Shown here: positions 8,953 through 63,136 of the stretch, one piece after another
Layout: each line of letters starts with the position of its first letter
Position numbering within the stretch: the first letter of the stretch is position 1
Virus record (IMG/VR): IMGVR_UViG_3300020474_000001
Location: 124,001-188,000 of that record
Length of the DNA stretch: 64,000 nt
Reading direction: 5' to 3' (one strand)
Position numbers and translations under genes: made by a program
Notes under the pieces: model-generated
Told to the model about the DNA's origin: nothing
Databases searched by the model: none
Seen by the model: only the letters and a program-made list of their open reading frames with translations

Positions 8953-8998
8953 AGTATACATGAAAAAAGGGGACCGTGTGGTCCCCCAGTGGACAGTT
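8953..8998 (-). promoter_or_regulatory. Promoter/terminator cassette upstream of cobS
   Basis: Half-site AACTGTCCAC, perfect hairpin GGGGACC-N4-GGTCCCC plus T-run, then -10 TATACT. Confidence 0.65.
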
Positions 8999-9155
8999 AT
9001 TCAAGTGTCCTCTGTTCGTAGTAATTCTCAGATATTATTTTGGCAGTGTATCCAGGATAATACCTTTGAACCCATGCGTTGATCCCCATAGCAGTAATTG
9101 CACTACTACAAACAACTAAAACTTCTTTAGTATCTTCCAATACAATGTGCTTCAT
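8997..9155 (-). CDS. 52-aa hypothetical protein (not in ORF track)
   Basis: Manual translation MKHIVLEDTKEVLVVCSSAITAMGINAWVQRYYPGYTAKIISENYYEQRTLE; 4-nt overlap with the upstream stop. Confidence 0.65.
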   Translation of the reverse strand: MKHIVLEDTKEVLVVCSSAITAMGINAWVQRYYPGYTAKIISENYYEQRTLE

Positions 9156-11281
9156 ACTACTAAAGAAATAAACTCTCCTAGAACTTTTTTATTTAGTTTC
9201 TTTGTTTTAAGAGACTTAATGAAAGCGGATTTAATCTGACCCTTTGTTGCACCATCATTAATGTCAAAATCAGAGTTCTGAGAAAGTGTGGTTGATGACA
9301 TTCCAAAGTAAGCATGATAACCGGACCTAGTGATGCAGAAGCTTCTATTCTTTTTCCAGTCAGAAAAGATCTTATCATAAGAATCGCTACCATAACTATG
9401 GTATTGCCTGATAAAACCATTTGCTTCGCGAGGTGGCAATACTCGGATACCAATAAAGTTTACGTTTGGAAAACTTCCTTTAAGATCCTTCAATAAGGTA
9501 TCTGTAAATTCGTGGAAATATACACCAAAATTCAAAGTAGTTCCGGTCTTCCTATTACGAAGATACCCACGATCACTAGGAATTTTACGTTGACCCAGGT
9601 AAGGTTCATCTTCCCAAGGACGATCTACTAGTACGTGTCTCGCAAGTGGTCCAGCCTCACCGTCTGTAAGAACTATACACTGAACTTTTTGAACACCGGT
9701 TTCTTTACTAAATTTTGGAAGTATATTATGTAGAGTAATCAGAGCCTCATTCAAAGGAGTCCCAGATAAAGAAAGTTTGTCAGGAATACTGTAATTAGAT
9801 TGCCTTAAAGTAAAGTAAGAAGCAATCCTCCAAATGTTAATCATCTGAGTTTGTAAATCCTTACCACTCACTTTACTGGTTAATAAATTCAACATACTAA
9901 AGCAATCATCTACACAGATTAACCCATTTTCTCTTTCATAGTGTGGAGACATATCAACTGCAACATAACGTCCATATTCAGAAGAATATTCCATCTTGTT
10001 CCACTCATTTGTAAAAGCATAAACCTCAAAGGGAATTGATACTTTCTTACAGAACCAAATCAAATTATATAATTGCTTGATCGTATCCAAGAGAACATTA
10101 GACATTGAACCCGACCAATCGAGAACAAACACCAGTCCATGATTCTTTCCATCAGAAAGAGTGGTTACTTTCTTAAAAAGATCTTCACTATACTTATACG
10201 TATGAAGTTTAGAGCAGTCCAAAACACCAGTTCTAGAAGTACTAGCACGGGCATAGGAGTCTGCAGCTTTCTTGCACTCAAACTCCTTTACTAGATAATT
10301 GACTTCTTTTTGTGCTGATTTTTTGAAAGACATGAATTCTGAATCAACAGATTCATAAATGTTCCATGGGGAGACATCATATTCTTTACAATGATCAATC
10401 ATTCTCTGTTTCGATGCATTCTCATATCGGAGACACTCTTTATGAATATCAGAATTGGAAACAATAACTGTATCTAGATTAACATCAGGTATTTCCACAT
10501 ACACATTATCTGAAGAATTATCTCTATTAAGATCTTTAAGTTTTTCCTCAAGACTGTCTACAGTATGTGTGGATGTCTCACTAAATCCACCACCTTTCTT
10601 AGGAGCATCATTCGAATTATTACCATCAGCATCTTCAGATGCCGGATTAATTCCATTTTCTTTTGTTTTTGTACTATCAGATTCTTCTGAAGATTCGGAT
10701 GATTTATTGTGAGAGGCAGGAACAGAAGATTTTTCTTGATCCTTAGATTCACAAAACTCATACAGTTTTCTTGTAGCAGCAATAGCATCTTCAAAGGTTT
10801 CACACTCTGCAATCATTTGAACAATAGGTTTTTCACTATTCTCAAAGGATATATCACCATGACTACCAATCTTAAAATAAAGATTGACTCGATCAGGTAA
10901 GCTCATTTTAGAAATATCTTCTCCAGAAATGCAAAAGAAATCTCTATCAGATAGCTCTTTGTATCCCTTAAAGAAACTTTTTGAAAGACCAGGATACCTA
11001 CGCTTCATCAACTTTTCAATACGAGCATCCTCTACAATATTGAACACAGAGTGAGGAACTTCTTTTGGTGGATCCACATTTGGAGTGAACAGAGCATGTC
11101 CAACTTCATGACCAACCAACAAATCATAAACAGAATTGCTGGCACGATCCCAGAGAGGAAGGGTCAAAACTCTGGTTTCTACATTGAACTGTGCTGTCTC
11201 AACACTTCGGTTCTCTACAATGATATCTTCCGTAGCGAGCAACTTTGCCAGTTGAGACTTGATTTCGTGTGAAATGGGCAT
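9152..11281 (-). CDS. CobT-like protein: N-terminal HExxH metallopeptidase-like domain plus vWA domain
   Basis: LVGHEVGHAL, NIVEDARIEK, MIDAS LDWSGSM, SGTPLNEAL, VLTDGE. Confidence 0.85.
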   Translation of the reverse strand: MPISHEIKSQLAKLLATEDIIVENRSVETAQFNVETRVLTLPLWDRASNSVYDLLVGHEVGHALFTPNVDPPKEVPHSVFNIVEDARIEKLMKRRYPGLSKSFFKGYKELSDRDFFCISGEDISKMSLPDRVNLYFKIGSHGDISFENSEKPIVQMIAECETFEDAIAATRKLYEFCESKDQEKSSVPASHNKSSESSEESDSTKTKENGINPASEDADGNNSNDAPKKGGGFSETSTHTVDSLEEKLKDLNRDNSSDNVYVEIPDVNLDTVIVSNSDIHKECLRYENASKQRMIDHCKEYDVSPWNIYESVDSEFMSFKKSAQKEVNYLVKEFECKKAADSYARASTSRTGVLDCSKLHTYKYSEDLFKKVTTLSDGKNHGLVFVLDWSGSMSNVLLDTIKQLYNLIWFCKKVSIPFEVYAFTNEWNKMEYSSEYGRYVAVDMSPHYERENGLICVDDCFSMLNLLTSKVSGKDLQTQMINIWRIASYFTLRQSNYSIPDKLSLSGTPLNEALITLHNILPKFSKETGVQKVQCIVLTDGEAGPLARHVLVDRPWEDEPYLGQRKIPSDRGYLRNRKTGTTLNFGVYFHEFTDTLLKDLKGSFPNVNFIGIRVLPPREANGFIRQYHSYGSDSYDKIFSDWKKNRSFCITRSGYHAYFGMSSTTLSQNSDFDINDGATKGQIKSAFIKSLKTKKLNKKVLGEFISLVV

Positions 11282-11302
11282 CGTCGTTTTGCGTATGCAT
11301 CA

Positions 11303-11360
11303 ATTATAGGGAAGGTGGGGCAGGTTCTGGGGCAGAGTAGACAGTTTTTCAACTGGTCAC
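11303..11360 (-). promoter_or_regulatory. Palindrome-associated promoter of the vWA gene
   Basis: GTAGACAGTT-tttc-AACTGGTCAC (11337-11360), 28 nt, then -10 TATAAT (11303-11308). Confidence 0.65.
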
Positions 11361-13064
11361 CATGCGACTAAATCCCTTAATCTTCTCAAACTTAATGGTA
11401 TCCTGAAACTTATCAAATAAACTTTCTTTGTGTGAGATGACAAAGACATTGGCATCACTCACAACATAATTGATAATTTTTAGAAACTCTTCTGTTCCAA
11501 ATGCATCGAGAGAACTATCAAATACTTCATCCATGATTAGTAGATTAGTATTTACAGAATTTTTCATTCTTGCAACTTCTCTCCAGGTAAACAAAAGAGC
11601 CAAATCTATTCTCATCTTTTCACCTTCACTAAAAGAAGAGTAAGAGAAATTATCATGTATAGCAGATTGTATTGTCTCATTAAACTCACCATCAAGACTA
11701 AAGTTGATGTAGATATCCATCATTTGAAGATATCGATTTACCTGCTGATTGATTAGAGGAAGATACTTACTAACAATCTTAGATTTAACCCCACCATCCT
11801 TTAGTAGCGAGTATGAAAACTCATAGTGACAAACTTTTTCACGTATCTCTGCTATTTGTTCAAGAGATTCTCCCAATCTTTTTTCATACTCTTGCAGTTT
11901 TTCGACTTCAGTATTTTTGTCTGCAATCTGGGAGGTAATTCCTTGAATTTCCGATTCCAAACTCTTGATTTGTTTGCGAATCTCAGAGATCGTAGTATTG
12001 TTTGTAGATATGCCATGCGTTAGAGATGTTATCTCCTTTGTGAGTTTATTGAGTTGATGCTCTCTCTCTTCTTCATTTTTAATTGCCTGTTCAAGTTCTG
12101 TAAACCCGGATTGCAACTCTACTATTTTATTTTGAGCATCGTTAATTTTATTTATTCTGAAGTCTTCGTCAATGGACTGCGTGCATGTCGGGCAAACCGT
12201 ATTGCTAGTAAAAAACTTATGATCTTTAGATACCGACTCGATGCGATGAGATATCTTCCCTCTAAGTTGATTCAACTTTTTTAACTTAGTTTTTCCATCA
12301 GACCAATCATCAAATTCAATCTGCTTCTCAACAATACTATCTTCATACTTCTCATTCTTCTTCATATGATCCAACATCTCATCTTCCAGTTTATCAATTC
12401 GATTGTGCTTTGATTCAATCATGAACTCAGCATCACGCTCAACCTTTTCGATAAACTCCTTTTGCATATTATACTTATCTGTAAGGGAAGTTTTTTTAAG
12501 ATCAGATATCTTAAGATTTTCTTTTAACTCTCTTATCCTTTCCTTAATCAACAAATTCATATTAGAAAATACTCTAATGTCCAACAAATCTTCAATCACT
12601 TCACGACGATTTGCTGGTGATAATTGCATGAATGGGACAAAACTACTACTTCCCAAAATTACAAGTTGTGTAAATGACTTATAATTCATCTTCAAAACAT
12701 TTTGTTCAAACCACTTCTGCTGATCTACAGCTGAAGCATGTTGATCTAGCAAACTATTATTTCTCCATATTTCAAATACATTCGGTTTTATCCCCCGAAC
12801 AACTTTCCACTTAACAGAAGAGATTTCAAACTCTATCACCACCAAGCAATCCTTTTCATTTACCGAATTTGGAAGCTGTGGTTTATTGATTTTACGAAAA
12901 GGTTTAGCAAACAAAGAAAATGTCAATGCATCCAAAATAGTGCTTTTGCCAGCACCATTTGTGCCAATAATCAACGTAGTTGATTTACCGGTTAAATTCA
13001 CTTCTGTAAATTGGTTGCCAGTAGAAAGAAAATTCTTCCAACTAATCTTCTCAAATAAAATCAT
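11349..13064 (-). CDS. g46: Recombination endonuclease ATPase subunit gp46 (Rad50/SbcC-like)
   Basis: GTNGAGKST, zinc hook CPTC, SFSEGEK, LIMDEVFDSSLD. Confidence 0.97.
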   Translation of the reverse strand: MILFEKISWKNFLSTGNQFTEVNLTGKSTTLIIGTNGAGKSTILDALTFSLFAKPFRKINKPQLPNSVNEKDCLVVIEFEISSVKWKVVRGIKPNVFEIWRNNSLLDQHASAVDQQKWFEQNVLKMNYKSFTQLVILGSSSFVPFMQLSPANRREVIEDLLDIRVFSNMNLLIKERIRELKENLKISDLKKTSLTDKYNMQKEFIEKVERDAEFMIESKHNRIDKLEDEMLDHMKKNEKYEDSIVEKQIEFDDWSDGKTKLKKLNQLRGKISHRIESVSKDHKFFTSNTVCPTCTQSIDEDFRINKINDAQNKIVELQSGFTELEQAIKNEEEREHQLNKLTKEITSLTHGISTNNTTISEIRKQIKSLESEIQGITSQIADKNTEVEKLQEYEKRLGESLEQIAEIREKVCHYEFSYSLLKDGGVKSKIVSKYLPLINQQVNRYLQMMDIYINFSLDGEFNETIQSAIHDNFSYSSFSEGEKMRIDLALLFTWREVARMKNSVNTNLLIMDEVFDSSLDAFGTEEFLKIINYVVSDANVFVISHKESLFDKFQDTIKFEKIKGFSRMVTS

Positions 13065-13323
13065 TGTTTCCTTCCTGAGGTACTACAAAATCGTTTTTCG
13101 TAATAATTGCATACTTACAGTCATTAACTTCACAACTACTAATAGCTACATCCGTATCAACTTCGATTACATGCATCTCTGGAGATCCATCTTCTTCAAG
13201 CATTAGACTAAATCTAATAGCATCATCTTCTTCTTCAAAAAAATATATTACTTCCTCCTTTTTCTCATTGATAGCATAGTAAATGGTTTCTGCTTCTCTG
13301 CCCAAAATAGTAATTACAAACAT
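13051..13323 (-). CDS. Hypothetical protein between g47 and g46
   Basis: ORF track; YFFEEEDDAIRFSLMLEE; operon spacing. Confidence 0.75.
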   Translation of the reverse strand: MFVITILGREAETIYYAINEKKEEVIYFFEEEDDAIRFSLMLEEDGSPEMHVIEVDTDVAISSCEVNDCKYAIITKNDFVVPQEGNNDFI

Positions 13324-13324
13324 A

Positions 13325-14368
13325 TTATATCATCTCACATGCTTCTTGGTAAACTTGCTTCATAATCATCTGTATCTTGGATTTGTCAATATCAACTTCG
13401 GACTCTTCAATATACCTATTCAAAATGGACAAAGTATCTTCAGTTTCAAAAGCCTCAAACTCTTCATTCTCATGTATATCAAAGTTCTCAACAATTTTAA
13501 GATCAGCAACTCCAGCTGAATATAACTTATCGATTACCTTTTCAAATTCTTTAGGTCTAGGTTTATTGCGAACAATTACCTTGACAATTTTATCTTTATA
13601 TGGTCTTGAATCAAGAAGAGATGCTGGTTCATCATCATAATACAACTTTGTAAATAACTTGTAAGGATTATCGATCGGTGTAAGTTCTAAAGTATCGGTG
13701 TCAAATATATGAAATCCTCTAGGATCATCCACATCATTCCAGTAAATTTCATAAGGATTTCCCAGATAAGTTATTTTCCCATCAGTTGATCGAGTGTGAT
13801 AATGACCACTGAATACCTTATCAAACTTATTAAATGATTCGCGATCAAAACCATGCTGCATGAAGACGTGCTTATTAGCTGCAAATCCTGCTAGTTCAAG
13901 GTGTCCCATTGACACTCTACAATCTGTCTTATCAATAAGTTTAAAAGTTTTTTTCTCGTTTTGAGAATTGATCCAAGGAATGAATAAAATCTTGAGTTTG
14001 TCTACCAATACCTCTTTTGCTTCTGAATATACACTCACATTATCATACTCACGAAGTAACAAATCTACTGCATTTACATCGTTTGTATTCTTATGATATG
14101 CATCATGATTGCCAACAATCAAATGAACTTTGATTCCACGTTCTTTGATTGGGTCAAAAATATTATTCTTTGCCCAAGACAAGGCACCAAAATTTACCCC
14201 AGTCCGATTATCAAAGGCATCTCCAAGATGTAAGATAGTACTAATACCTTCTTTGTCTATTGTAGGGAAGAAAACGTCATTATAAAATTTCAAAAAATAA
14301 TCATGAAATAGTTTAGAGTTTTTACGGGCACCGTAGTGTGTGTCCGTAATAATTGCAACTTTCATCAA
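13325..14368 (-). CDS. g47: Recombination endonuclease nuclease subunit gp47 (Mre11/SbcD-like)
   Basis: ITDTHYG, HLGDAFD, VGNHD, SGHYH phosphoesterase motifs. Confidence 0.97.
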   Translation of the reverse strand: MMKVAIITDTHYGARKNSKLFHDYFLKFYNDVFFPTIDKEGISTILHLGDAFDNRTGVNFGALSWAKNNIFDPIKERGIKVHLIVGNHDAYHKNTNDVNAVDLLLREYDNVSVYSEAKEVLVDKLKILFIPWINSQNEKKTFKLIDKTDCRVSMGHLELAGFAANKHVFMQHGFDRESFNKFDKVFSGHYHTRSTDGKITYLGNPYEIYWNDVDDPRGFHIFDTDTLELTPIDNPYKLFTKLYYDDEPASLLDSRPYKDKIVKVIVRNKPRPKEFEKVIDKLYSAGVADLKIVENFDIHENEEFEAFETEDTLSILNRYIEESEVDIDKSKIQMIMKQVYQEACEMI

Positions 14369-14901
14369 TACCGAAGTTTGGAGTGTACCTGGTCCTTAAT
14401 TTGATTATAGTCAGAATAGTTCGATCCGTCAAGTGTGTTGCTATCATCAAACACTTCGTTATAACCTGACCTCTCAATAATTTTATTTTTAATATCTAAC
14501 TGACGCTTCTCTCTTTGGATACGACGAAGGAATGCGTAGTGAATGATTTGTGTGAAGTATGCAAAAGGATTCTGAGATTTCTGTGGATCAAAATTATGAA
14601 TGTACTGAACACAGTTTTCAATCCCATCAGATATCATATCCTCCTTGAACATATAGTTCACAAAGTTTGGTTTGAATGACAAGTGATTCGCAATCTTTAA
14701 AAAACACTCACCAATGTAATTTGGTATTGGTGGTTTTGTATCCCATCTAGTTGCTCTATCTGCCTTCTCTGGCTCTCTGCCGTACTTCTTAATAAATGTT
14801 CTCTCAACCTCTGCTCTGTATGCAGAAAGTGCTGCTAAAAACTCTTTATTATTAACATAGTGCTCTGATCTTTTTCTTTTTGCCACAGTATTTCCCAACA
14901 T
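14365..14901 (-). CDS. g55: Late-transcription sigma factor gp55
   Basis: HYVNNKEFL, YIGECFLKIA, EDMISDGIENC, NPFAYFTQI. Confidence 0.97.
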   Translation of the reverse strand: MLGNTVAKRKRSEHYVNNKEFLAALSAYRAEVERTFIKKYGREPEKADRATRWDTKPPIPNYIGECFLKIANHLSFKPNFVNYMFKEDMISDGIENCVQYIHNFDPQKSQNPFAYFTQIIHYAFLRRIQREKRQLDIKNKIIERSGYNEVFDDSNTLDGSNYSDYNQIKDQVHSKLRY

Positions 14902-14926
14902 AAGATACTCTAATAATTATGTAGTA

Positions 14927-14977
14927 ATTATATCACTGAAACGTGGTATTGACAAATCCTCAAAATACCTCTAGAAT
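14927..14977. promoter_or_regulatory. Back-to-back sigma70-type promoters sharing a -35 region
   Basis: Minus: TTGTCA-17-TATAAT towards g55; plus: TTGACA(14949)-17-TAGAAT(14972), antisense to the upstream genes. Confidence 0.7.
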
Positions 14978-15018
14978 AACTATGTCAGGGTTGATAAGAA
15001 ATACTATAGATATAGATA

Positions 15019-15432
15019 TTACTCAGTATCAGTTTCAGTTTCTTTGTTAAAGAGTCTTTCTAAAATCTCTTTGGCATCATTAATATTGGAGATATATCCC
15101 ATTTCTTTAGTAATGTTTCCAGATCCACCCTTGTTCTTTTTTTTATTCTGATGAATAAACTCTTGATGCATTTTAATTACATCTATATCAGAAGATTCTG
15201 ATATTGTTAGTACATCGTCTAAACTTATTATATACATGTCATCTTTAGACATTTTGATCCAAGGTTCAACTTTATATCCAATCACATCTCCTTTAATGTG
15301 AACCTCTCCAATTATAACAGGATTTGATAGTATAAGGAATATTTTGTCACCTTCTTCTGAAGCAGCTACTTTTGCAAATATTTCTTCACTATTCTTCAGT
15401 TTTATGACTGCGTAAAAATCCTCTTCTATCAC
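15019..15432 (-). CDS. Hypothetical protein between uvsW and g55
   Basis: ORF track; FYAVIKLKNSEEIFAKV...KVEPW; operon spacing. Confidence 0.8.
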   Translation of the reverse strand: MIEEDFYAVIKLKNSEEIFAKVAASEEGDKIFLILSNPVIIGEVHIKGDVIGYKVEPWIKMSKDDMYIISLDDVLTISESSDIDVIKMHQEFIHQNKKKNKGGSGNITKEMGYISNINDAKEILERLFNKETETDTE

Positions 15433-16916: not shown

Positions 16917-16943
16917 AAATGTTCATCCATCTGTGAGTATTTA

Positions 16944-18159: not shown

Positions 18160-18179
18160 TTTATTGAATATTTATGGAT

Positions 18180-18206
18180 AAAAAAAGAGGGTCTCGAAAG
18201 ACCCTC
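18180..18206 (-). terminator. Intrinsic terminator after g23
   Basis: GAGGGTCT-N4-AGACCCTC with a T-run on the minus strand. Confidence 0.85.
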
Positions 18207-37000: not shown

Positions 37001-40000
37001 AATCTGAAAATTATACATGAAGTTTCTCTAGTCTTTTGATCTAAACCATTGGCAATCACTTTTCCTTCTACCGTTTCACCAGACTGAAAAACTCCTTCAA
37101 TCATAGAAATTTCAAGTAACTTTGGTATGCAGTAATTTGTTACTTCTTTTCCATCAAAGAATGCATACATTCTTGTGTTTGGTTTTACATTTTTAGATTC
37201 AAAGTGAATATTTGTTGATTTTGATTTCAAATCAATCTTATTTAAAACCTTTCCTTGAATTGATATCCCATCAATATTGGAATTATCCATACCAATCCAA
37301 TTCTTTTGCCATGAATTCCAAACAGTTGGCTCAAAACCAACCTGCATGTCCACTTCTTTATCTTTTCTAACATCAATCCAGTCATCAGATCTTGGTTTGA
37401 GATCCAACATGCCTTGCCAAAAACTAACAGTGAATGGAGTGACATTTTCAGTTCTTGTCGCAAAGGTTTGAGATAAACACTCGATTTCCGAATAATCTAG
37501 GGTTATCAAGTTATCACTTCTTTGTATATTCACACCTTCTGCATTTGAAAAGTATAAATCATCTCCTGGAGCAATCTGATCCACTGGTCCTAGAATCATT
37601 CCTATAGACGTAGTATAGTGTTTTGGTCTCAATTCATTGTTTGACTCATCTATACTATTATTGATATAGACAGAAGTATCTTGTGATTTTGTTGTTGCAA
37701 AATCATCTACAAAGAATCCAGATTTAAATCTATCACTAGAATTTTGATCTCCTATAAACATATTTGCAGTAGATGTTTCAAGAAGTGATAACTTTGTTTC
37801 CTTCTCCAATTTTGACAATCTATCACTAATATGCTTAACATCTTTCATAGTATATCTCTTATTTTCCGATGTTAAGATGCTTGCGTCTTTAGTATCGTAG
37901 AGATATGGTGGAAGATTAATAGTTGCTATTTCTAAAGTTCCATCTACTTGATCTGGTTTTTCAGGAATATCTGATGGAACACCATATTTAACTTGAAATC
38001 TTCCAGATTTAGTTAAGAATATGCTATCAATTCTTCCTCTGTGATAAGAAAAATCTAAATCTATTGGTTCACCTGAAGCCAAAATATTTTTAGATGTGTT
38101 TCCTTGCTGCAAAAATCTCCTTCCCATAAACTCTAGCGGAGAGCGATCTTCTACTTGAGTAAAATTGGAAACTCTTGGTCGGATATCGATAATATCAGTA
38201 TTTCTGATTTCACCAATAGATGAAATCTCACTACTATAATCAAAATTTGAATATGAATTTACTGTTGTTATATCTCCACCATCAGTAGAATCATAAGATG
38301 CATGTGAAAAGTAAACTTTTAATTTTCTTGTCGGCTCTTCTACATCACTTTTTCTAGTTATTGTCGAATAATCATAAAATGTATTTTTTTGTCCACTAGA
38401 GAATGTATAATTTGACGTAATATCAAAACTTGGCGATTCTATTGAAATTATACTTGCTGAGTGCTCAGATTGCTCTAGTACAATAGATTCTCCAACCTTA
38501 AATTTATTCTCGTTTTTATATAAGATTGAGATTTCTTCTGCAGCATTTTTTTCAGATAATATTGCAACAGCACCACTTATCTGTCCAACGATTCTTTCTC
38601 CAATAATAAACTCAGATGTTGTTGATGAACTAGAATTAATTGTAGATAGAAATAGTTTTGGTGAACTAGGATCTTCTACATCTGTCGATTCAAATATGCC
38701 ATGAATAGAGATAACATCTGGTGTATTCAATGAAATGATTTCATCTTGAACTCTGGTTCCGAATGCATATCCATTAGTGCCGTAGTCCAATCCATCATTT
38801 AATGTTGTACTACCAACTCCAGATGATAATAACTTTGAATTGTTGATAATTATTGAACTTACTTTATTGTTTATTTTTTCTTTTGCTGATGGTGAAGATT
38901 TTTTCAGAGAAGCCATTAATGTGGCTCCAGTATCATCTGCACCTAAATTGACTATGGTTAGTGATTTTGAATCAATAGCTAATTGAACTTTGCTAAAATC
39001 CAACTCTTCAATACTACCATCAGATCTAATTAATGAGTATCTTGATGGAGAAAACTGCATAAACTCTTCCCCAATATCAGCATTCGGAGTAGTATTTGTT
39101 GTTATTCTATTATTTGCTATATTAACAATAAATTTCTTTCTAATAGAAATATTAGAATTATTTAAATTTATATTTGATATATTTGTTTTGGGTAGTTTTG
39201 TAAATAGAGATTTGTCAGATGATTTGTCTAGATTTGTCTTTAGAATAGATAAATCAACTACATCAATATTTGATGTCGGTAGAGATCCATCAAAAACTCC
39301 AGTTACAGATGTAATTGAAGAAATTTCAATTGAATTTTCTAATACTTGTGTAACTTTGGCTGCTCTCTTTTGAGAAGATATCGTATATTGAAGCAAATCA
39401 TTTACGTATATATTTTTGGGGAATCCTTCCTCTGAACTAGTAATAGTGCTTGTTCCTGAAGATTCTGCTGTTATAGATGCTTTACCTATCACTTTGGGGG
39501 ACTGAATTGTATCGCAACTGAAATCAACATCTCCATTCTCATCTGTTGAGAATATTGACTTCACATTAGATACGCCAAAATTGTCGATAGATACTATTTC
39601 CCTACTAGATTCTAATCCATCAAATGACAGCGTCTCATTTTCTACAAAGGTTCCTTTTTTATCATAAACTGTAATAGAAGTACTATCTGTTACACTATTT
39701 TTTAGGAATGCTGTTGCCCCGCTATTTTTTCCCTTTATAAATGTTGGTGTACTTAAGGTTACTGCAGAATTAAGGGTAAGAGTGGAGAATATATTTAAAT
39801 CATATAGTGATATTGACCACTCATTTATGTCTTTGTTAGAATTGTAGTTTGATTTTAGTTTAAAATCATAAACTCTGGCAACTCCGATCTCATCTCCAGA
39901 TAAAGTTGTGGATGCTGCGCCAACCCTATCAGATCTAAGACTAACATAGTAAGATGTTCCAATACCAATATTTGGTGCCCCATAAAGTCTATTTACTGAT

Positions 40001-55290: not shown

Positions 55291-55298
55291 GTTTCTAA

Positions 55299-57230: not shown

Positions 57231-57235
57231 CTTCT

Positions 57236-57643
57236 TTATCTAGTTGGCTGTAAAACAAATTCTAACTGCTGGATTTGTGAATTAATATCAATCCCAATGA
57301 TTTCATATACAATTGATACATTAAATTCACCATTGTCATAATCTGAACCTACATCAACTTCGATTAATTTCACTCTTGGTTCATAATTTATAATGGAATT
57401 CTCAATTTTATCTTTGAGGATGTTTGCACTAAAGGTATCTATGTTCTCAAACAATGATGCGGTAACATCCGTACCAAAATCATAGTCAAAAAATTTCTCA
57501 CCAAATTGGGTATACACAATATTCCGAACACTTCGGGCAATTGCAGTCTCATTCTTTACTGGAAATATATCATCAGTTAATGGGTTCTTCTTAAATGATA
57601 AACTAATATCCTTAAACCCCTTACTGACCCTTTCTAGTGGCAT
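57236..57643 (-). CDS. g25: Baseplate wedge subunit gp25
   Basis: FKDISLSF, AIARSVRNIV, NYEPRV. Confidence 0.93.
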   Translation of the reverse strand: MPLERVSKGFKDISLSFKKNPLTDDIFPVKNETAIARSVRNIVYTQFGEKFFDYDFGTDVTASLFENIDTFSANILKDKIENSIINYEPRVKLIEVDVGSDYDNGEFNVSIVYEIIGIDINSQIQQLEFVLQPTR

Positions 57644-57649
57644 TTAAAT

Positions 57650-57787
57650 TTATAAATCTTCTTTTTTATTTATTCCCTTTTTTTCAGATTTTTTCTGCTT
57701 CAAGTACTTATCACTACTTACTTCCGTAATTAGTGTCATTCCTGATTCAATAAAATTTTTGCTTTTGTCAACTGGTGAATTGCCCAT
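57650..57787 (-). CDS. 45-aa hypothetical protein (not in ORF track)
   Basis: Manual translation MGNSPVDKSKNFIESGMTLITEVSSDKYLKQKKSEKKGINKKEDL with GGAG RBS. Confidence 0.65.
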   Translation of the reverse strand: MGNSPVDKSKNFIESGMTLITEVSSDKYLKQKKSEKKGINKKEDL

Positions 57788-57892
57788 AATAGTCTCCGAG
57801 ATACTACTGTAAGAACTTTTGTATGGGGTTTCTATCCCGCTGCTCAGATGTATTTATCAAAGAGCTACGTCGCGCCGTATAAACCCCTATAT

Positions 57893-57927
57893 AAAAAAAT
57901 GAGAGCGCCCCATTGAGACACTCTCAT
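57893..57927 (-). terminator. Intrinsic terminator
   Basis: ATGAGAGTG/CGCTCTCAT stem plus T-run on the minus strand. Confidence 0.7.
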
Positions 57928-57933
57928 AAACAC

Positions 57934-58074
57934 TTAACCTTTCCCTTGTCCTCGATAACGCTTTCGAGCTTTGTTACGTGAACTGGCAGCATACTTTGTA
58001 TGTTTCCCAGCACCTTGTCTTGTGTTCTTGGGAGTTGGTACAATTAAATCGCCAGTCTTACTTCGCATTGCCAT
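57934..58074 (-). CDS. 46-aa highly basic hypothetical protein (not in ORF track)
   Basis: Manual translation MAMRSKTGDLIVPTPKNTRQGAGKHTKYAASSRNKARKRYRGQGKG with GAGG RBS. Confidence 0.7.
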   Translation of the reverse strand: MAMRSKTGDLIVPTPKNTRQGAGKHTKYAASSRNKARKRYRGQGKG

Positions 58075-58085
58075 AATTCTTTACC

Positions 58086-58865
58086 TCAAATAATACGAGT
58101 CTTTTCATGTCCGACACGAATGCGTGGATCACAGAGAATACTAAAACCAGCTTTCTTTGCATCTAAACAAAAACTGACATCCTCGCCACACATGTCCTGC
58201 ACTTCACCACTCTCAAATACTTGCATCTTAGGTGCAAACCATGGATATGGTAATCCCTTATCCTCAAATACTCCCTTCCGAATTAACATCCACCCAAATC
58301 CTGCATAATCTACAGTGAATGGTTCGGTACGACCACTTAGACTTGTTAATGTCTCGTGATTCATTACCCCACCGTTATCCTTGAATCCATTCTCATCCAT
58401 CCAATGTGCAACACTCGATGACTTGCCATCTTCTGTACAATACCATCCAGTCGTAATTGCATTCTTCTTTCCTTCCTCAGGTTCTGCTAATGCACATAAC
58501 TGCCAGAATTTCTCCGTGTTGAATACAATATCACTATCAATCCATAATTGATAATCATACTCTAACTTACCGTCCCATGGCTCTTGGTCGGGTCCCCTCA
58601 ATACATTGGCACCCAAACATTTGCAACGGGCGAAATTTACCATTGAACTGTAATCTTGACTAATCTGTATAGCCATTCCATTCTGTACTAAGTCAAAACA
58701 TAATTGCACAAAATTTTTGAGAAATGTATACGATACTCCCCTGCCTGGAAGGCAAAATACAATCGTCTTCCCTCTCATACTCTCTTTGATACTCTCGTAA
58801 TCCCACTCAGGCTCTGATACACTCACAGCAGCGGCATCCTCCTTGATACTGAATCCTTTAGACAT
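58086..58865 (-). CDS. GT-A fold glycosyltransferase-like protein
   Basis: DxD motif WIDSDIVF, AGFGWMLI, CGEDVSFC, RVGHEK. Confidence 0.7.
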   Translation of the reverse strand: MSKGFSIKEDAAAVSVSEPEWDYESIKESMRGKTIVFCLPGRGVSYTFLKNFVQLCFDLVQNGMAIQISQDYSSMVNFARCKCLGANVLRGPDQEPWDGKLEYDYQLWIDSDIVFNTEKFWQLCALAEPEEGKKNAITTGWYCTEDGKSSSVAHWMDENGFKDNGGVMNHETLTSLSGRTEPFTVDYAGFGWMLIRKGVFEDKGLPYPWFAPKMQVFESGEVQDMCGEDVSFCLDAKKAGFSILCDPRIRVGHEKTRII

Positions 58866-58888
58866 AATCTTTCAATGACTACTCCGTA

Positions 58889-58917
58889 ATTATAACAAAT
58901 TTATATATACCTGTCAA
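58889..58917 (-). promoter_or_regulatory. Consensus sigma70 promoter
   Basis: TTGACA-17nt-TATAAT on the minus strand upstream of the GT-like gene. Confidence 0.85.
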
Positions 58918-59111
58918 TATTGTTACCCTTGACCACCCTTTTATATCCCACGGATTTTTTTCTGAAACCTTATACAAAAACCCTTTTTGGGTGGCAAAAA
59001 TTTTTGGCGTTTTTTTATATACATCGCGTTTTGTCACCTCTGTAGGTTAGGGATGTTTGCTTTTTTTAATACGCGCAAATATAAACAATTAACAATAAAT
59101 CGTAATTACTG

Positions 59112-59239
59112 TGTATTACTAATAGATAGTGATTTGCTATGTATTACTAATAGATAGTGATTTGTTATTTGATAATTAGCAGATTACTATTTGATAATTA
59201 AGCGATTGCTATGTAATAAGAATAGATAGCAATCGCTTA
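59112..59239. repeat. AT-rich direct repeats and a perfect inverted repeat
   Basis: 25-bp TGTATTACTAATAGATAGTGATTTG at 59112 and 59140; TATTTGATAATTA twice; 14-bp IR 59199-59212 / 59226-59239. Confidence 0.9.
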
Positions 59240-59267
59240 TATATTACTATATTGTGGATAGTCAATA

Positions 59268-59510
59268 TTAATAGTCTGCCCATTCTGCTAGCATTTCATT
59301 CAATCGCGCAACGTCCAAATCAGCATGCTTCCAATACACACCATCAGGAGTAACTGCACCGTAAAGTTCAACTAATTGGTGCGAGAGTGACTTATAACCG
59401 TGCTCCGCAAACATACGAGCAAGGTTATACATTCCCTCATCATTACCCAACCAGAGAGCAACATTCCAGGTTTCGTAGTTTGCCCAACCGTTGCAAGTTT
59501 GAGTGCTCAT
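59268..59510 (-). CDS. Putative early hypothetical protein (NGWANYETW motif)
   Basis: CNGWANYETWNVALWLGNDEGMY...TPDGV motif typical of small phage early proteins. Confidence 0.8.
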   Translation of the reverse strand: MSTQTCNGWANYETWNVALWLGNDEGMYNLARMFAEHGYKSLSHQLVELYGAVTPDGVYWKHADLDVARLNEMLAEWADY

Positions 59511-59547
59511 AATTCAGGGGGAAGATGTAAAGAATGGGGAGCGTTGC

Positions 59548-59739
59548 CTAGTCAAGGAGAACAGCAGCGTGATCGTTAGCGAAGCGGCGAGCGTTACAGG
59601 CAGCGATCTGCCATGCGGGACGCCCTGCTGAGGGTTCAGGGAACGCTGCGGAAATGGCAGCATCGACGCCCTGGTGGATGGAGCGTTCAACCCATACGTG
59701 GGAACGATCAGAGAGGGAGCAAGCGGGAGAGAAGGGCAT
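59548..59739 (-). CDS. Small GC-rich putative early hypothetical protein
   Basis: ORF track; same strand and spacing as neighbours; pyrimidine-rich leader. Confidence 0.45.
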   Translation of the reverse strand: MPFSPACSLSDRSHVWVERSIHQGVDAAISAAFPEPSAGRPAWQIAACNARRFANDHAAVLLD

Positions 59740-59797
59740 TGGAAGAACGGGGGGAGAGATACATGGGGGCGACGATGCCCCCGCTGTGTTGTGGTGC

Positions 59798-60016
59798 TTA
59801 GGGGAACATCAAGTCGGTAAAGCGCTCGGAGTGCCATGCCCGCAACTCGCCTAGGTCGATTCGCTCGCCCATCAGGCGTCCGTAGTCGATGGCGAACTGC
59901 TGTAGAAGGCAAAGTTCAGGATTAACAGGGTCCCAGACATAGCGAACTGCCTCTGGAAAGGAGATGGTGCCATTGGCATCAGCGGTGGGCATTGGTTTCG
60001 TTTGAACTAAACCCAT
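59798..60016 (-). CDS. Small putative early hypothetical protein
   Basis: Preceded by the palindrome/leader cassette at 60017-60070. Confidence 0.55.
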   Translation of the reverse strand: MGLVQTKPMPTADANGTISFPEAVRYVWDPVNPELCLLQQFAIDYGRLMGERIDLGELRAWHSERFTDLMFP

Positions 60017-60132
60017 AATCGCCGAGATCTCAGGAGAAATCTATAGGCACTGTGCCAGTTTGCCAACTGGTTTTGACTGGTTTTGAAATGTTAAGAGTTG
60101 TGAAATATTCGCGATTCTGCCTCTCGGTGCGC

Positions 60133-60218
60133 TACACTATGGGAGACAACCAAAGGAGGGGTGAGGTAGCCCTGATGACGCCAACGGTCGCCACTCCCCC
60201 TGCAATCAATTAAGTATA
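60133..60218 (+). other. Repeated element copy 1 between convergent -10 boxes; contains 12-codon ORF 60175-60213 (MTPTVATPPAIN)
   Basis: TACACT(+) ... GAGGTAGCCCTGATGACG...CGCCACTCCCCCTGC ... TATACT(-). Confidence 0.7.
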
Positions 60219-60270
60219 TCATTTTGTTACAAAATCCCTGTCAATGGGTTGTGTGCCACTATGGCGGGTG

Positions 60271-61011
60271 TCACACCCCGGCATGCTGTTGCTTATATGG
60301 TTTCAAAAATGCGGCGTTAAGTTTTACTTTAGCGTTAAGATTCGACTCCTTTGACTGACCGCCGTGCAGCAACAGTGCAAAGGGACCATCCATGAAACAG
60401 CGTTCTTCGTGGCGGTACTCGACACCGTCAATTGGCAGATTCAGTTCTGCCGCTTCTGCAATATCCTGCACGACCTTTACATAGCGAGGGAACCTGCCAG
60501 CATCAATTAATGCATCATATCTGCCGCCATAAGATGCTGTCATATAGAAATTATCAGGCAAAATAACACTGCGGAACAAGTGCAACGACTTAGAGTAGCA
60601 ATAGAATTTAAGACCTGGCATTCTCTTGGCGACCTTAATCCATGCTTTTAAATACTCAATATTGAAAAAATCACCAGACTCATGTATACGAATGCGAGTA
60701 TACTTACGGCGGCGCTTCTTTAACTCTACCTGAATCGATTGATAGATTAACTCCTCAATATTGTCACTAGCATTAATTAAATCAAAATTATGCTTTCGTG
60801 CATCATAAACTGCAGGATATTGTGCTTCAGCACGGGCAGCGAAACAAGTGAATTCAGTGTTATCACCACGCACTAGATTGCGCTTGCCGCTGTTAACAAC
60901 TGCCCATGCCCTACACTTATCAGCACCGGGACAGGTTCTACCCGCAGGCAGGTTGAAAATCAAGGTGTCGGGGTGCAGTTTAGCGTTGCCAGCGGAGAAC
61001 TTAAGAAGCAT
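60271..61011 (-). CDS. GP88-like (radical-SAM-related, Cys-containing) phage protein
   Basis: FSAGNAKL, FNLPAGRTCPGADKC...CFAA, RIRIHESGDFF, FYCYSKS; start MLLK at 61011. Confidence 0.75.
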   Translation of the reverse strand: MLLKFSAGNAKLHPDTLIFNLPAGRTCPGADKCRAWAVVNSGKRNLVRGDNTEFTCFAARAEAQYPAVYDARKHNFDLINASDNIEELIYQSIQVELKKRRRKYTRIRIHESGDFFNIEYLKAWIKVAKRMPGLKFYCYSKSLHLFRSVILPDNFYMTASYGGRYDALIDAGRFPRYVKVVQDIAEAAELNLPIDGVEYRHEERCFMDGPFALLLHGGQSKESNLNAKVKLNAAFLKPYKQQHAGV

Positions 61012-61150
61012 GGATCTGAGGTCGATTGATACCAGTATTGCCGGGATTCGCATGCATGCTGGGGTCATTGTGCCACTATGCCAACTGGTTTGAAACGTTA
61101 CAAGATGTTAAAGGTTCGTGAATCTGCCGCACTTCCCCCATCCGATACGC

Positions 61151-61235
61151 TATGATGTGGGAACAACAGAAGGAGGGGCAGGGCAGCCCTGATGACGAAA
61201 AAAGGCGACACTCACCCTGCAACGAAATAATCATA
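61151..61235 (+). other. Repeated element copy 2; contains 12-codon ORF 61192-61230 (MTKKGDTHPATK)
   Basis: TATGAT(+) ... GGGCAGCCCTGATGACG...CGACACTCACCCTGC ... TATGAT(-). Confidence 0.7.
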
Positions 61236-61291
61236 AGATATGTGACACTTTATGAACTGTCACAGTGCCACTTTTATATGTGGTTTTATTA

Positions 61292-61358
61292 CATAATTGT
61301 ATTTTATGGCAGGGTAAGTGGCGATCGTTGTCGTCTTCGGTGCTACCTCACACCTCAA
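61292..61358 (-). other. Repeated element copy 4 (inverted; AAG in place of ATG, no in-register stop)
   Basis: Minus strand reads GAGGTGTGAGGTAGCACCGAAGACGACAACGATCGCCACTTACCCTGCCATAAAA. Confidence 0.65.
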
Positions 61359-61489
61359 TAAATTGTAACAATCAGAGCATAATGGTGTTTCCCAACTGAT
61401 CGTATCTTAGCACAGCAGGAGCAGATCCGTGACCCACTCCGTAACATAATGAAATATTATCACTTTGCCAGCATAGAGTTTGAGTGATA

Positions 61490-61714
61490 TTATTCTTCCT
61501 CCTCCTCTACTTTTACGACCTTGAGTTTACCTGCGGCAATAAGATCCAACAGCATACCAGTCGATCCCTTCAAAATACCGTCTCCGTCAATACGCAGACA
61601 CTGAAATTCTTTGGCAATGTCATCTACAATGTCCGGCGTTATTTCCCCACAACGGATGGCATATACTCGTCTTGTATGCTCGTCGTTGATGTCAAGACCC
61701 AAATAGTTTCTCAT
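61490..61714 (-). CDS. Putative early hypothetical protein
   Basis: ORF track; plausible composition; acidic tail. Confidence 0.6.
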   Translation of the reverse strand: MRNYLGLDINDEHTRRVYAIRCGEITPDIVDDIAKEFQCLRIDGDGILKGSTGMLLDLIAAGKLKVVKVEEEEE

Positions 61715-61765
61715 GATGATGAAGATGAAGATGATGTTAGCGAAGGTGATGATTGTGAAGGTGAT

Positions 61766-62002
61766 TCAATACTGTGGATCAATGAACATAACAGTGCAGG
61801 ATCCACGCGGACGAAGAATAATGGTTTCGCCACATTCTTCTCGGTCACATTTCACTCCAGATAATCCTATTGCTTCCTTACATGCTAGGACAATCTGTCG
61901 ATCAGTGGCACAATCTGAGAGACTAATTGTCTCCCGATCACACCAACTGTAGTTTGCTTCACCACCGAATGTGTCAGTGTACTCAACCTTAAAGTTCTGC
62001 AT
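61766..62002 (-). CDS. Putative early hypothetical protein (YTDTFGGEANYSW motif)
   Basis: VEYTDTFGGEANYSWC...AIGLSGVKC...LRPRGSCTVMFI. Confidence 0.8.
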   Translation of the reverse strand: MQNFKVEYTDTFGGEANYSWCDRETISLSDCATDRQIVLACKEAIGLSGVKCDREECGETIILRPRGSCTVMFIDPQY

Positions 62003-62040
62003 GATTCAAAAAAAGAATAAAGTTTGCGGGTAAAATCTTA

Positions 62041-62304
62041 TCAGGTGTGAGTGCTACCATCAGGTAACATGCAACCGTGAAGACCACAATTTGGCAAAAT
62101 ACCTTCGATGATGACACTGTAGGTGCCATTATGATGGTTTCCTTGCACATCTTCCTCCACCATTAACCCCTGCATAAGTTCAACAACACTCTTGCCTGTT
62201 TGTATGCTCCACATAGAAAACTTTGCGAGTTGCTGATAAGTCAGAACCTGGAAGTGATCACCCAGGGTTCCATCAGATTCGAGAAGTGGTGCTCTGTAAC
62301 GCAT
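62041..62304 (-). CDS. Putative early hypothetical protein
   Basis: ORF track; preceded by palindromic sites at 62340-62385. Confidence 0.65.
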   Translation of the reverse strand: MRYRAPLLESDGTLGDHFQVLTYQQLAKFSMWSIQTGKSVVELMQGLMVEEDVQGNHHNGTYSVIIEGILPNCGLHGCMLPDGSTHT

Positions 62305-62393
62305 TTGGTTGGTTGCGATTGATATAAGTATGGGTCAGAGTGGACAACTTATCAACCTCAGAGTGACAGTTTGCCAAGTGTCCACTAATGTTA

Positions 62394-62759
62394 TCAAGCG
62401 ATTGCCCTTTCTATCATTTTAATAATAAGTTCACTTGGCGCTACAATATCATTAACTACGCTTTCTTCCCCCGTTGCTTCTAAGGGAACACAAGTTAAGT
62501 GCATCTTCCAATCATATTTTCTATTGTTGAAGAACAACATAGAATAATCTACAGCATCGACAATATCAGCACCGATAACAGCAAGGGATTTTGTATTCTT
62601 TTCTTTGCTAACTTTCCATTCTTTGACAGGTTCCATACCTTCGCCGTCGAGAACATCAAACGCAACAAGATTCCAACCTGCATCATCAAGTTTGCGAATA
62701 ATCTTCCGGGCGTTGCTGCATGTCTTGGAGATTGCCATGGGGTTGATGTAACTGAACAT
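62394..62759 (-). CDS. Putative early hypothetical protein
   Basis: ORF track; preceded by the leader cassette and a palindrome at 62762-62819. Confidence 0.65.
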   Translation of the reverse strand: MFSYINPMAISKTCSNARKIIRKLDDAGWNLVAFDVLDGEGMEPVKEWKVSKEKNTKSLAVIGADIVDAVDYSMLFFNNRKYDWKMHLTCVPLEATGEESVVNDIVAPSELIIKMIERAIA

Positions 62760-62848
62760 ATAATCATCGAGATCTCAGGACCAATCAATACCAGCTGTGA
62801 CAGTTCACCAAGTGTCCACCGATGCCCTCAGAGGCACCTAGGAGGCGC

Positions 62849-62932
62849 TATAATATAAACAAATCAGAAGAGAGGTGGGGTAACCTCGATGACAACAAAT
62901 ATCGACACTACTCCTGCCATAAAATAATTATA
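62849..62932 (+). other. Repeated element copy 3; contains 12-codon ORF 62889-62927 (MTTNIDTTPAIK)
   Basis: TATAAT(+) ... GGGGTAACCTCGATGACA...CGACACTACTCCTGCC ... TATAAT(-). Confidence 0.7.
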
Positions 62933-62947
62933 TCAAAATGTAACAAT

Positions 62948-63136
62948 GTGCCAGTTTGCCAAGTGTCACAGTGCCAGTTCATAAACTGTCCACTCGGTCC
63001 TACTGCCTCCCTCCCGTGCTCCACCCTTCCACTGTAGGGGCTGCTGCCCGCTGCTGCTGTATAAACCACTACGATTTTATAAATTGTCACAAAGACACAT
63101 AAAGCACTGGCACTGGACAGTTCTCGAAGTGTCCAC
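62948..63136. promoter_or_regulatory. Cluster of palindromic operator-like sites
   Basis: GTGCCAGTT-tgcc-AAGTGTCAC (62948), GTGCCAGTT-cata-AACTGTCCAC (62971), TGGACAGTT-ctcg-AAGTGTCCAC (63114). Confidence 0.75.

What the first reader, a model, noticed from the sequence alone, without database searches (positions are those of the whole stretch)
8989..63136. Palindromic operator network, usually 28-30 nt upstream of a -10 box, linking early genes with cobS and the vWA gene
Seen in sequence: consensus GTG(A/C/G)CA(G/C)TT-N4-AA(C/G)TG(T/G)C(C)AC occurs at about 11337, 60052, 60253, 61070, 61242, 62363, 62797, 62948, 62971 and 63114, with half-sites at 8989, 62340, 63082 and 63106. It is absent from the 45-kb structural block. 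In four cases the proximal end lies 28-30 nt from a -10 hexamer lacking a good -35 (cobS 30, vWA gene 28, GP88-like 30, cassette copy 3 29). Inference: a dimeric activator defines a phage regulon, analogous in role but not in sequence to the T4 MotA box. I recall a palindromic early-promoter motif being reported for the cyanomyovirus Syn9; that needs verifying, and the binding protein is unknown to me.
Basis: partly seen in the sequence, partly recalled or inferred. Interest (0 to 1): 0.65.

Follow-up and report, generated by a model that had tools for sequence, protein, structure and literature searches.

The report
Cyanophage early-promoter palindrome, binder unknown
A 22-base palindrome sits a fixed 29-31 bases upstream of the -10 box of the early genes, cobS and its neighbour in this marine T4-like cyanophage; it is real and shared by cultured relatives, very probably the early-gene element already reported for Syn9, and the protein that reads it is still unknown.

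Summary
The window comes from a 207.7-kb T4-like cyanomyovirus, with a portal 78% identical to S-SM2. A matrix built only from other viral contigs finds 9 sites in the window against 0.11 in shuffles.

The element is not private to this phage.
- More than 120 IMG/VR contigs carry it, as do Syn9, P-SSM2, P-SSM4, S-PM2 and P-HM2.
- T4, a pelagiphage, T7-like cyanophages and cyanosiphoviruses lack it.
- About 400 genomes of the host family lack it too.

Across 504 sites a TAnnnT box lies 30 or 31 nt from the palindrome. A -35 box is usually missing, the promoter-proximal half-site is better kept, and many sites serve divergent promoters.

In P-HM2 the sites sit in front of the published early genes. 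These include cobS and the gene upstream of it, the only early genes outside the early cluster.

The best reading is a binding site for a dimeric activator centred near -54 of early promoters that have only a -10 box. This is most likely the "novel regulatory element" of Doron et al. 2016, which I could not read. The binder is unidentified. This is a new member of a known kind.

The parts
8990..9011 (-). Palindromic site upstream of cobS (TGGACAGTT-ATTC-AAGTGTCC), 15.2 bits
   Evidence: The orthologous site in P-HM2 stands before cobS, which is early class.
8953..8958 (-). -10 box TATACT of the cobS promoter, 31 nt from the site. The cobS ATG is at 8930.
8963..8986 (-). Intrinsic terminator (GGGGACC-acac-GGTCCCC plus T6 on the minus strand) packed inside the 31-nt spacer between site and -10 box
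   Evidence: Read from the sequence. It shows that the spacer length is constrained, not its sequence.
11338..11359 (-). Palindromic site upstream of the 709-aa CobT-like ('vWA') gene. It overlaps the stop codon of the gp46/SbcC-like gene.
   Evidence: The same position is occupied in Syn9 (127493) and P-HM2 (125043).
11303..11308 (-). -10 box TATAAT, 29 nt from the site. The gene's ATG is at 11281.
60052..60073 (-). Site with a consensus proximal half and a degenerate distal half (AAACCAGTT). It is identical to P-HM2 site 38152.
60253..60274 (.). Degenerate site at the 3' end of cassette 1 (22.6 bits, poor central part)
61070..61091 (.). Weak site (9 bits) abutting the ATG of the GP88-family gene 60271-61068
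61242..61263 (.). Perfect-consensus site (32.4 bits) at the 3' end of cassette 2, followed by a degenerate second copy
62363..62384 (-). Site 30 nt upstream of CATACT (62327-62332), the promoter of the 87-aa gene 62041-62304
62797..62818 (.). Divergent site. On the + strand, TATAAT (62849-62854) lies 30 nt away and drives cassette 3. On the - strand, GATGAT lies 28 nt away, before gene 62394-62759.
62948..62992 (.). Two adjacent strong sites (62948-62969 and 62971-62992), 23 bp centre to centre, without a -10 box at the standard distance
63114..63135 (.). Site of the TGGACA variant type (13.9 bits) in the gene-free stretch 62.82-63.53 kb
60175..60213 (+). Cassette 1 micro-ORF (12 codons, MTxxxxTxPAxx) behind a Shine-Dalgarno hairpin. 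Copies 2 and 3 are at 61192-61230 and 62889-62927.
   Evidence: Two more copies stand in other viral contigs (L096, L098).

Best explanation
The palindrome (T)GTG(A/C)CA(G/C)TT-N4-AA(C/G)TG(G/T)CAC(A) is the upstream recognition element of the early promoters of T4-like cyanomyoviruses. A symmetric protein dimer binds it on DNA. If transcription starts 7 nt after the -10 box, the core spans about -64 to -43 and is centred near -54.

From there the dimer helps host RNA polymerase, carrying its primary sigma factor, to use promoters that have a sigma-70-type -10 box but usually no -35 box. Because the site is symmetric, one dimer can serve two divergent promoters.

In this phage the element switches on the small-ORF early region (window 60-64 kb and the next 16 kb of the genome). 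It also switches on two isolated genes inside the replication and structural part: the CobT-like 709-aa gene and cobS.

Shown here:
- the motif, its excess over chance and its fixed spacing;
- its conservation across the family;
- its link with published early-class genes in P-HM2.

Inferred:
- that a protein dimer binds it;
- that the effect is activation;
- the position of the transcription start.

The binding protein is unknown. The absence of the motif from host chromosomes and from other phage families of the same hosts makes me lean slightly towards a factor of the cyanomyovirus itself (injected or made first) rather than a host regulator.
For: Excess over chance:
- 7 sites against 0.6 matches expected.
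- 9 against 0.11 with a matrix built from other contigs.
- 18 against 0.1 in the whole genome.

Family-wide occurrence:
- Those 120 loci, 1.01 Mb in all, hold 522 sites.
- P-SSM2 has 17 hits against 1 in the control, P-SSM4 9/1, S-PM2 15/0, P-HM2 13/0 and T4 0/0.
- Syn9 has sites in its small-ORF cluster gp60-gp90 and between gp46 and the 'peptidase' gene.

Geometry:
- TAnnnT follows the core at 30 nt in 280 and at 31 nt in 192 of 1008 oriented flanks. The background is about 15 per offset.
- A TTGACA-like -35 box occurs in only 100 flanks.
- 291 sites are one-sided, 132 two-sided and 63 have no -10 box at the standard distance.
- The proximal half-site is better conserved than the distal one (119 sites against 55). 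The symmetric S positions are complementary in 34% of sites, against 50% expected if independent, so there is no selection for an RNA stem.
- A terminator sits inside the cobS spacer without changing its length.

Expression: in P-HM2 seven of nine geometry-positive sites precede Early(A) genes, which are 20 of 242 genes. Two of the seven precede PHM2_135 and cobS, the only early genes outside the early cluster (Thompson et al. 2016, PMC5082946, S2 Table).
Against: - There is no start-site or expression data for this phage. Four metatranscriptomes from the source samples gave no contigs on the region.
- No DNA-binding domain was recognised in 61 early-region ORFs by Pfam or PHROGs, so there is no candidate protein.
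- A centre near -54 is not a classic activator position for CRP-type proteins.
- Some strong sites (62948, 62971) have no -10 box at the standard distance. Two P-HM2 sites precede Mid(B) genes.
- S-SM2 and SynMITS9220M01, close relatives by portal sequence, have few or no strong sites.
- I could not check identity with the published Syn9 element, because Doron et al. 2016 is not in the paper library.
Confidence: 0.6

Rival explanations
1. Host-factor hijack: the same architecture, but the dimer is a regulator conserved in all marine Synechococcus and Prochlorococcus. The phage recruits it so that early genes fire at time zero without any phage protein.
For: Early promoters must work before phage proteins are made. 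The consensus is nearly invariant in phages of very different hosts (MED4, NATL1A/2A, WH7803, WH8102), as expected for a conserved host protein. No phage DNA-binding protein was found.
Against: In 201 host-family genomes, hits with 2 mismatches or fewer are no more frequent than for the reversed control. In 401 genomes with 1 mismatch or fewer, only 6 have a hit. These are a mis-binned phage contig, a coding coincidence in a LysR gene and one mobile island, with the hits in G172, G222 and G280 not resolved. Only 9 of 40 host hits have a TAnnnT box at 29-32 nt, which is about chance. T7-like phages, siphoviruses and S-TIM5, which infect the same hosts, lack the motif. Weaker host sites would have escaped these searches.
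Confidence: 0.3
2. Operator for shut-off: a phage-made repressor binds the palindromes, possibly cooperatively at paired sites, and closes early promoters at the switch to middle transcription.
For: There are paired sites 23 bp apart (62948/62971, and 61242 with a degenerate neighbour), gene-free clusters of sites, and tandem 58-bp arrays in other contigs where each site also lies just downstream of the previous promoter. Early transcripts do fall after 1.5 h in P-HM2.
Against: Sites lie upstream of the core promoter, not over the -35/-10 boxes or the start. The spacing is fixed to within 1 nt and a -35 box is missing, which calls for help rather than blockage. The proximal half-site is favoured.
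Confidence: 0.07
3. The palindromes act as RNA hairpins (terminators, processing or stability elements), or as DNA sites for replication, packaging or recombination, and their link to promoters is incidental.
For: They are inverted repeats with a 4-nt loop. Some stand at 3' ends of genes and cassettes. An AT-rich repeat region lies next to the densest cluster.
Against: There is no selection for complementarity: the symmetric variable positions pair less often than chance, 34% against 50%. No U-tract follows. Rfam finds nothing. The 30/31-nt link to a -10 box in about half of all oriented flanks cannot be incidental.
Confidence: 0.03

Closest known systems
Early-gene regulatory element of T4-like cyanophages (Doron et al. 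2016, ISME J 10:1437; Syn9 and P-TIM40)
   Same: The abstract, as I remember it, reports a novel regulatory element that controls early-gene transcription and is abundant and conserved among T4-like cyanophages. Here the palindrome stands in Syn9's small-ORF cluster with a -10 box about 30 nt downstream. It is conserved in five cultured genera and precedes early-class genes in P-HM2.
   Different: I could not read the paper, so the identity of the published logo with this palindrome is unverified. This window is a new, uncultured phage with unusually strong, near-perfect sites, paired sites and divergent micro-ORF cassettes.
Ogr/Delta-dependent late promoters of phages P2 and P4 (from my own knowledge)
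   Same: These promoters have a -10 box, a poor -35 box and a region of dyad symmetry centred near -55. A small phage activator binds it and contacts RNA polymerase. The satellite P4 carries the same element and so responds to its helper.
   Different: The sequence differs (TGT-N12-ACA there). Those promoters are late, not early. No Ogr_Delta homologue is present in this genome.
T4 MotA box and sigma appropriation (middle promoters)
   Same: A phage-specific upstream element combined with a host-type -10 box and no -35 box defines a temporal class.
   Different: The MotA box is 9 bp, asymmetric, centred at -30 and replaces the -35 box. It needs MotA and AsiA, which cyanomyoviruses lack (PMC2984593). 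The element here is a 22-bp palindrome near -54.
CRP/FNR/NtcA-type activator sites
   Same: A 22-bp twofold-symmetric site with outer TGTG...CACA, use at divergent promoters, and activation of promoters without a -35 box (type 2 cyanobacterial promoters).
   Different: The outer blocks are 16 bp apart instead of 6-8. There is an extra inner block (CAGTT/AACTG). The centre is at -53.5/-54.5 instead of -41.5 or -61.5. Host genomes hold no regulon of such sites.

Membership tests
Cyanomyovirus early-promoter element (Doron et al. 2016) | Stands upstream of early-class genes | tested here: met
   This is indirect. In P-HM2, 7 of 9 sites with a correctly spaced -10 box precede Early(A) genes, including cobS and PHM2_135. 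No expression data exist for this phage.
Cyanomyovirus early-promoter element (Doron et al. 2016) | Abundant and conserved among T4-like cyanophages | tested here: met
   It is absent from T4, HTVC008M, P-SSP7, Syn5, P-SS2 and S-TIM5.
Cyanomyovirus early-promoter element (Doron et al. 2016) | Sequence identical to the published motif logo | not testable with these tools
   The paper is not held. Citing papers do not quote the motif.
T4 MotA-dependent middle promoter | 9-bp asymmetric MotA box centred at -30, with motA and asiA genes | tested here: not met
   The element is a 22-bp palindrome centred near -54. Pfam names no MotA or AsiA family among its matches to the 61 early-region ORFs. Cyanomyoviruses lack motA and asiA (PMC2984593).
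P2 Ogr / P4 Delta late promoter | Dyad TGT-N12-ACA near -55, with a zinc-finger Ogr/Delta activator gene | tested here: not met
   The position and dyad character match, but the sequence does not. PF04606 is not found in the genome.
CRP/FNR-family site | TGTGA-N6-TCACA or a similar half-site spacing, centred at -41.5 or -61.5 | tested here: not met
   The site is TGTG-N16-CACA with inner CAGTT-N4-AACTG. The centre is at -53.5/-54.5 if the start lies 7 nt after the -10 box.
Lambdoid repressor operator | Sites overlap the -35/-10 boxes or the start; a repressor gene lies next to them | tested here: not met
   The core ends 29-31 nt upstream of the -10 box. No helix-turn-helix gene lies nearby.
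Structured RNA or intrinsic terminator | Compensatory changes keep the stem; a U-tract follows | tested here: not met
   Symmetric positions pair in 34% of sites against 50% expected. Rfam gives no match.

The most novel reading that the evidence does not exclude
The palindrome is read by a factor that the cyanomyovirus brings in or makes first, not by a host regulator. It is therefore a trans-acting signal that infection has begun. Mobile islands in host chromosomes have copied the element to switch themselves on during infection, as satellite P4 does with the activator of its helper P2.

One Synechococcus-family genome (G038) carries an island at tRNA-Ser that shows this arrangement. A perfect site lies 30 nt before a -10 box upstream of the integrase gene. 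A second site lies 31 nt before a -10 box upstream of an operon that ends in a Type ISP restriction-modification enzyme.
Probability: 0.12. Interest if true: 0.75.

Novelty: new member of a known kind. Interest (0 to 1): 0.4.

Why it matters
T4-like cyanophages kill a large share of the ocean's Synechococcus and Prochlorococcus. They lack the T4 proteins (Alt, Mod, MotA, AsiA) that organise early and middle transcription, so how they start their programme is only partly understood.

This window offers an unusually clean set of strong sites. The wider survey adds several rules:
- the spacing is fixed at 30/31 nt;
- the proximal half-site dominates;
- many sites are used in both directions;
- the element is absent from host chromosomes and from other phage families of the same hosts;
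- cobS and its neighbour belong to the early class.

These rules make the open question, which protein reads the element, directly testable by pull-down with a defined 22-bp probe. The element would also be a compact infection-responsive promoter for reporter work in marine picocyanobacteria.

Tried and rejected
1. I first took TATAGA/TATTGA boxes 6 nt from several sites for the -10 box, which would put the site centre at -30 as in MotA promoters. The survey of 1008 flanks shows no excess at that offset, and the real box lies at 29-31 nt.
2. RNA evidence: four metatranscriptomes from the same samples gave no contigs on window 59000-64000. This says nothing either way.
3. Rfam at gathering threshold gave no match in the window.
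4. Cassette RNA structure: RNAalifold on five copies found no compensatory pairs.
5. The recurrent host hit GTGCCAGTCAAACAACTGGCAC lies inside a LysR-type gene (GASQTTGT) and is a coding coincidence. A second recurrent host family (GTGCCACTAATYAAAYTG...) varies in a synonymous-looking way and lacks the -10 geometry, so it is probably coding as well.
6. Apparent similarity between a host locus and the cassette upstream region is borderline and was dropped.
7. A de novo search for another dyad in S-SM2, which has few sites, was too insensitive even for the window's own genome.
8. Candidate binder: Pfam and PHROGs on 61 early-region ORFs and Ogr_Delta on the whole genome found nothing. Clustering ORFs around sites in 120 contigs gave only acidic small proteins, DUFs, a helicase and a ligase-like protein.
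9. Literature: Doron et al. 2016 is not held. Seven searches and eight papers gave no description of the motif.
Full report
**What the window is**

The window is bases 124001-188000 of a 207,655-bp IMG/VR virus record. Its portal protein is 78% identical to that of Synechococcus phage S-SM2, and all best hits are T4-like cyanomyoviruses. Its psbA is 96-97% identical to psbA of marine Synechococcus. Nearly all genes run on the minus strand.

The window holds three parts:
- replication and repair genes, with a gp46/SbcC-like gene, a 709-aa CobT-like gene and cobS;
- a 45-kb structural block;
- from about 57 kb on, a region of small ORFs that runs on to the end of the genome.

Yes. A matrix trained on the genome itself finds 18 sites against 0.1 in shuffles.

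A matrix built only from other viral contigs is independent of this genome. None lies between 11.4 and 60.0 kb.

Some details need correction:
- 8989 is a full site.
- 61070 is weak.
- 62340 and 63082 are not sites.
- The network continues for another 16 kb beyond the window.

**What it is: anatomy**

Those 1.01 Mb hold 522 matrix sites.

I took 504 non-redundant sites and read 80 nt on each side.
- A TAnnnT hexamer starts 30 nt after the 22-nt core in 280 flanks and 31 nt after it in 192, of 1008 flanks in all. The background is about 15 per offset.
- A TTGACA-like hexamer occurs at offset 8 in only 100 flanks.
- Of the sites, 291 have the -10 box on one side, 132 on both sides and 63 on neither.

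If transcription starts 7 nt after the -10 box, the core spans about -64 to -43, with its centre at -53.5 or -54.5.

In one-sided promoters the half-site nearer the -10 box is the better conserved one (119 sites against 55). The two variable symmetric positions are complementary in 34% of sites, where independence predicts 50%. The symmetry is therefore that of a protein dimer on DNA, not of an RNA stem.

In the window the rule holds for:
- cobS: 31 nt, TATACT;
- the CobT-like gene: 29 nt, TATAAT;
- the 87-aa gene at 62041-62304: 30 nt, CATACT;
- cassette 3 on the plus strand: 30 nt, TATAAT.

It also holds for five or six promoters beyond the window. Upstream of cobS a complete intrinsic terminator is packed into the spacer without changing its length.

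**Relatives**

The same consensus is present in:
- P-SSM2, with 17 hits of three mismatches or fewer against 1 for the reversed control;
- P-SSM4, 9 against 1;
- S-PM2, 15 against 0;
- P-HM2, 13 against 0.

It is absent from T4. Syn9 has weaker copies. Six lie in its small-ORF cluster gp60-gp90 and one lies between gp46 and the 'peptidase' gene, and each has a -10 box about 30 nt downstream. That last position is the same as the window's site before the CobT-like gene.

The motif does not exceed chance in T7-like cyanophages P-SSP7 and Syn5, siphovirus P-SS2, S-TIM5 or pelagiphage HTVC008M. S-SM2 and SynMITS9220M01 are poor in strong sites.

**Link to early expression**

No RNA data exist for this phage. 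For P-HM2, Thompson et al. 2016 (PMC5082946, S2 Table) place 20 of 242 genes in the early cluster. These are PHM2_056-070 and 072-074, plus PHM2_135 ('peptidase') and PHM2_136 (cobS), which are early in the light.

P-HM2 has nine sites with a correctly spaced -10 box in the three stretches that I scanned with the matrix (35.4-45.5 and 122-134.5 kb). Seven face early genes: 37627, 38152, 38255, 39293 in both directions, 39760, 125043 before PHM2_135, and 127351 before cobS. Two face the first middle cluster.

**Who binds?**

This is not resolved.

In five marine Synechococcus genomes and 201 genomes of the host family, hits with two mismatches or fewer are no more frequent than for the reversed control. 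In 401 genomes with one mismatch or fewer, only six have a hit. They break down as follows:
- One is a mis-binned cyanophage contig.
- One is a coding coincidence in a LysR-type gene.
- One is a mobile island.
- Three were not resolved: G172 (-10 box arguable, downstream ORF without Pfam match), G222 (no convincing -10 box) and G280, which has the promoter geometry before a small secreted-looking ORF.

Of 40 host hits only 9 have a TAnnnT box at 29-32 nt, which is about chance. So there is no host regulon of strong sites, although weak host sites would have been missed.

On the phage side, Pfam and PHROGs recognise no DNA-binding domain in 61 early-region ORFs, and there is no Ogr/Delta homologue.

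Three things make me lean slightly to a factor of the cyanomyovirus lineage: the invariance of the motif across phage genera and hosts, its restriction to this phage lineage, and its absence from hosts. I still give a conserved host protein about 0.3.

**Comparison with known systems**

The element is very probably the 'novel regulatory element' of early genes reported for Syn9 and P-TIM40 by Doron et al. 2016. I know that paper's abstract only from memory, and the paper is not held.

In mechanism it is closest to promoters that depend on an upstream dyad, such as the Ogr/Delta-dependent late promoters of P2 and P4 with their dyad near -55 (from my own knowledge). It is further from the T4 MotA box, which is asymmetric, sits at -30 and needs proteins that cyanophages lack. 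It is also further from CRP-type sites, which have a different half-site spacing and position.

**Verdict**

The finding is real, and its interpretation is largely sound. It is a new member of a known kind, not a new kind. Its value lies in the sharpened rules and in the still unknown binder.

Noticed in passing
window 60120-60235, 61130-61235, 62830-62935 (+ strand); also L096:8148-8233 and L098:2205-2290: There are three copies of a small cassette on the strand opposite to all genes. Each has a -10 box, a Shine-Dalgarno sequence inside a short hairpin, and a 12-codon ORF (MTPTVATPPAIN, MTKKGDTHPATK, MTTNIDTTPAIK). Each ends at another palindrome, and -10-like boxes also stand on the antisense strand. 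Two more copies occur in other viral contigs. It is undecided whether the peptide or the RNA is the product.
   Followed up: partly
L061:778-2330, L055:88-780, L110:11-390 (IMG/VR contigs): These contigs hold tandem arrays of up to six 58-bp units without genes between them. Each unit is a palindrome, 8 nt, a perfect TTGACA, a 17-nt spacer and TAGAT or TAGCT. They may be promoter arrays or sinks for the factor or for polymerase.
   Followed up: no
L250 (G038:C1:111000-130900), sites at locus 3043 and 17296: A host-family chromosome carries an island next to tRNA-Ser. A perfect palindrome lies 30 nt before TAAATT upstream of a tyrosine integrase. A second site lies 31 nt before TATAGT upstream of an operon that ends in a Type ISP restriction-modification enzyme. 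The island may be tuned to cyanomyovirus infection.
   Followed up: partly
window 8963-8986: A strong intrinsic terminator for the CobT-like gene lies inside the 31-nt spacer between the palindrome and the cobS -10 box. Its T-tract occupies part of the spacer just upstream of the -10 box.
   Followed up: yes
window 62819-63535: This 0.7-kb stretch has no credible gene. It holds three strong sites (62948, 62971, 63114), a canonical TTGACA-N17-TAACAT promoter on the + strand (about 63181-63209), three tandem copies of a 12-nt unit (ACATAAGACTTT, about 63243-63280) and an AT-rich tract. It may be a control hub or an origin.
   Followed up: no
window 7839-8930 and 9152-11281: 'cobS' matches AAA_5 and the CbbQ/NirQ/NorQ C-terminal domain. 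Its 709-aa neighbour gave only a weak CobT hit in Pfam and no vWA domain at E of 0.01 or less, and it is annotated as 'peptidase' in Syn9 and P-HM2. The pair looks like a MoxR/CbbQ-type ATPase with its adaptor, and both genes are early class in P-HM2.
   Followed up: partly
G376:C1:131375-138572 (loci L259-L263): A 'genome' of the host family contains a contig with five strong sites in 7 kb and homologues of cyanophage early proteins. It is most likely a cyanomyovirus contig binned with its host.
   Followed up: partly
window 60052-60073 and P-HM2 38152-38173: The same imperfect site, GTGCCAGTTTGCCAACTGGTTT, occurs letter for letter in this Synechococcus-type phage and in Prochlorococcus phage P-HM2. 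In P-HM2 it precedes the early gene PHM2_061.
   Followed up: partly
genome 84534-84555 (outside the window, upstream of psbA at 83355-84254): A weak site (10.6 bits) lies with TATTAT 30 nt away on the psbA side. It is uncertain whether psbA has an early-type promoter here. In P-HM2 psbA is middle class.
   Followed up: no
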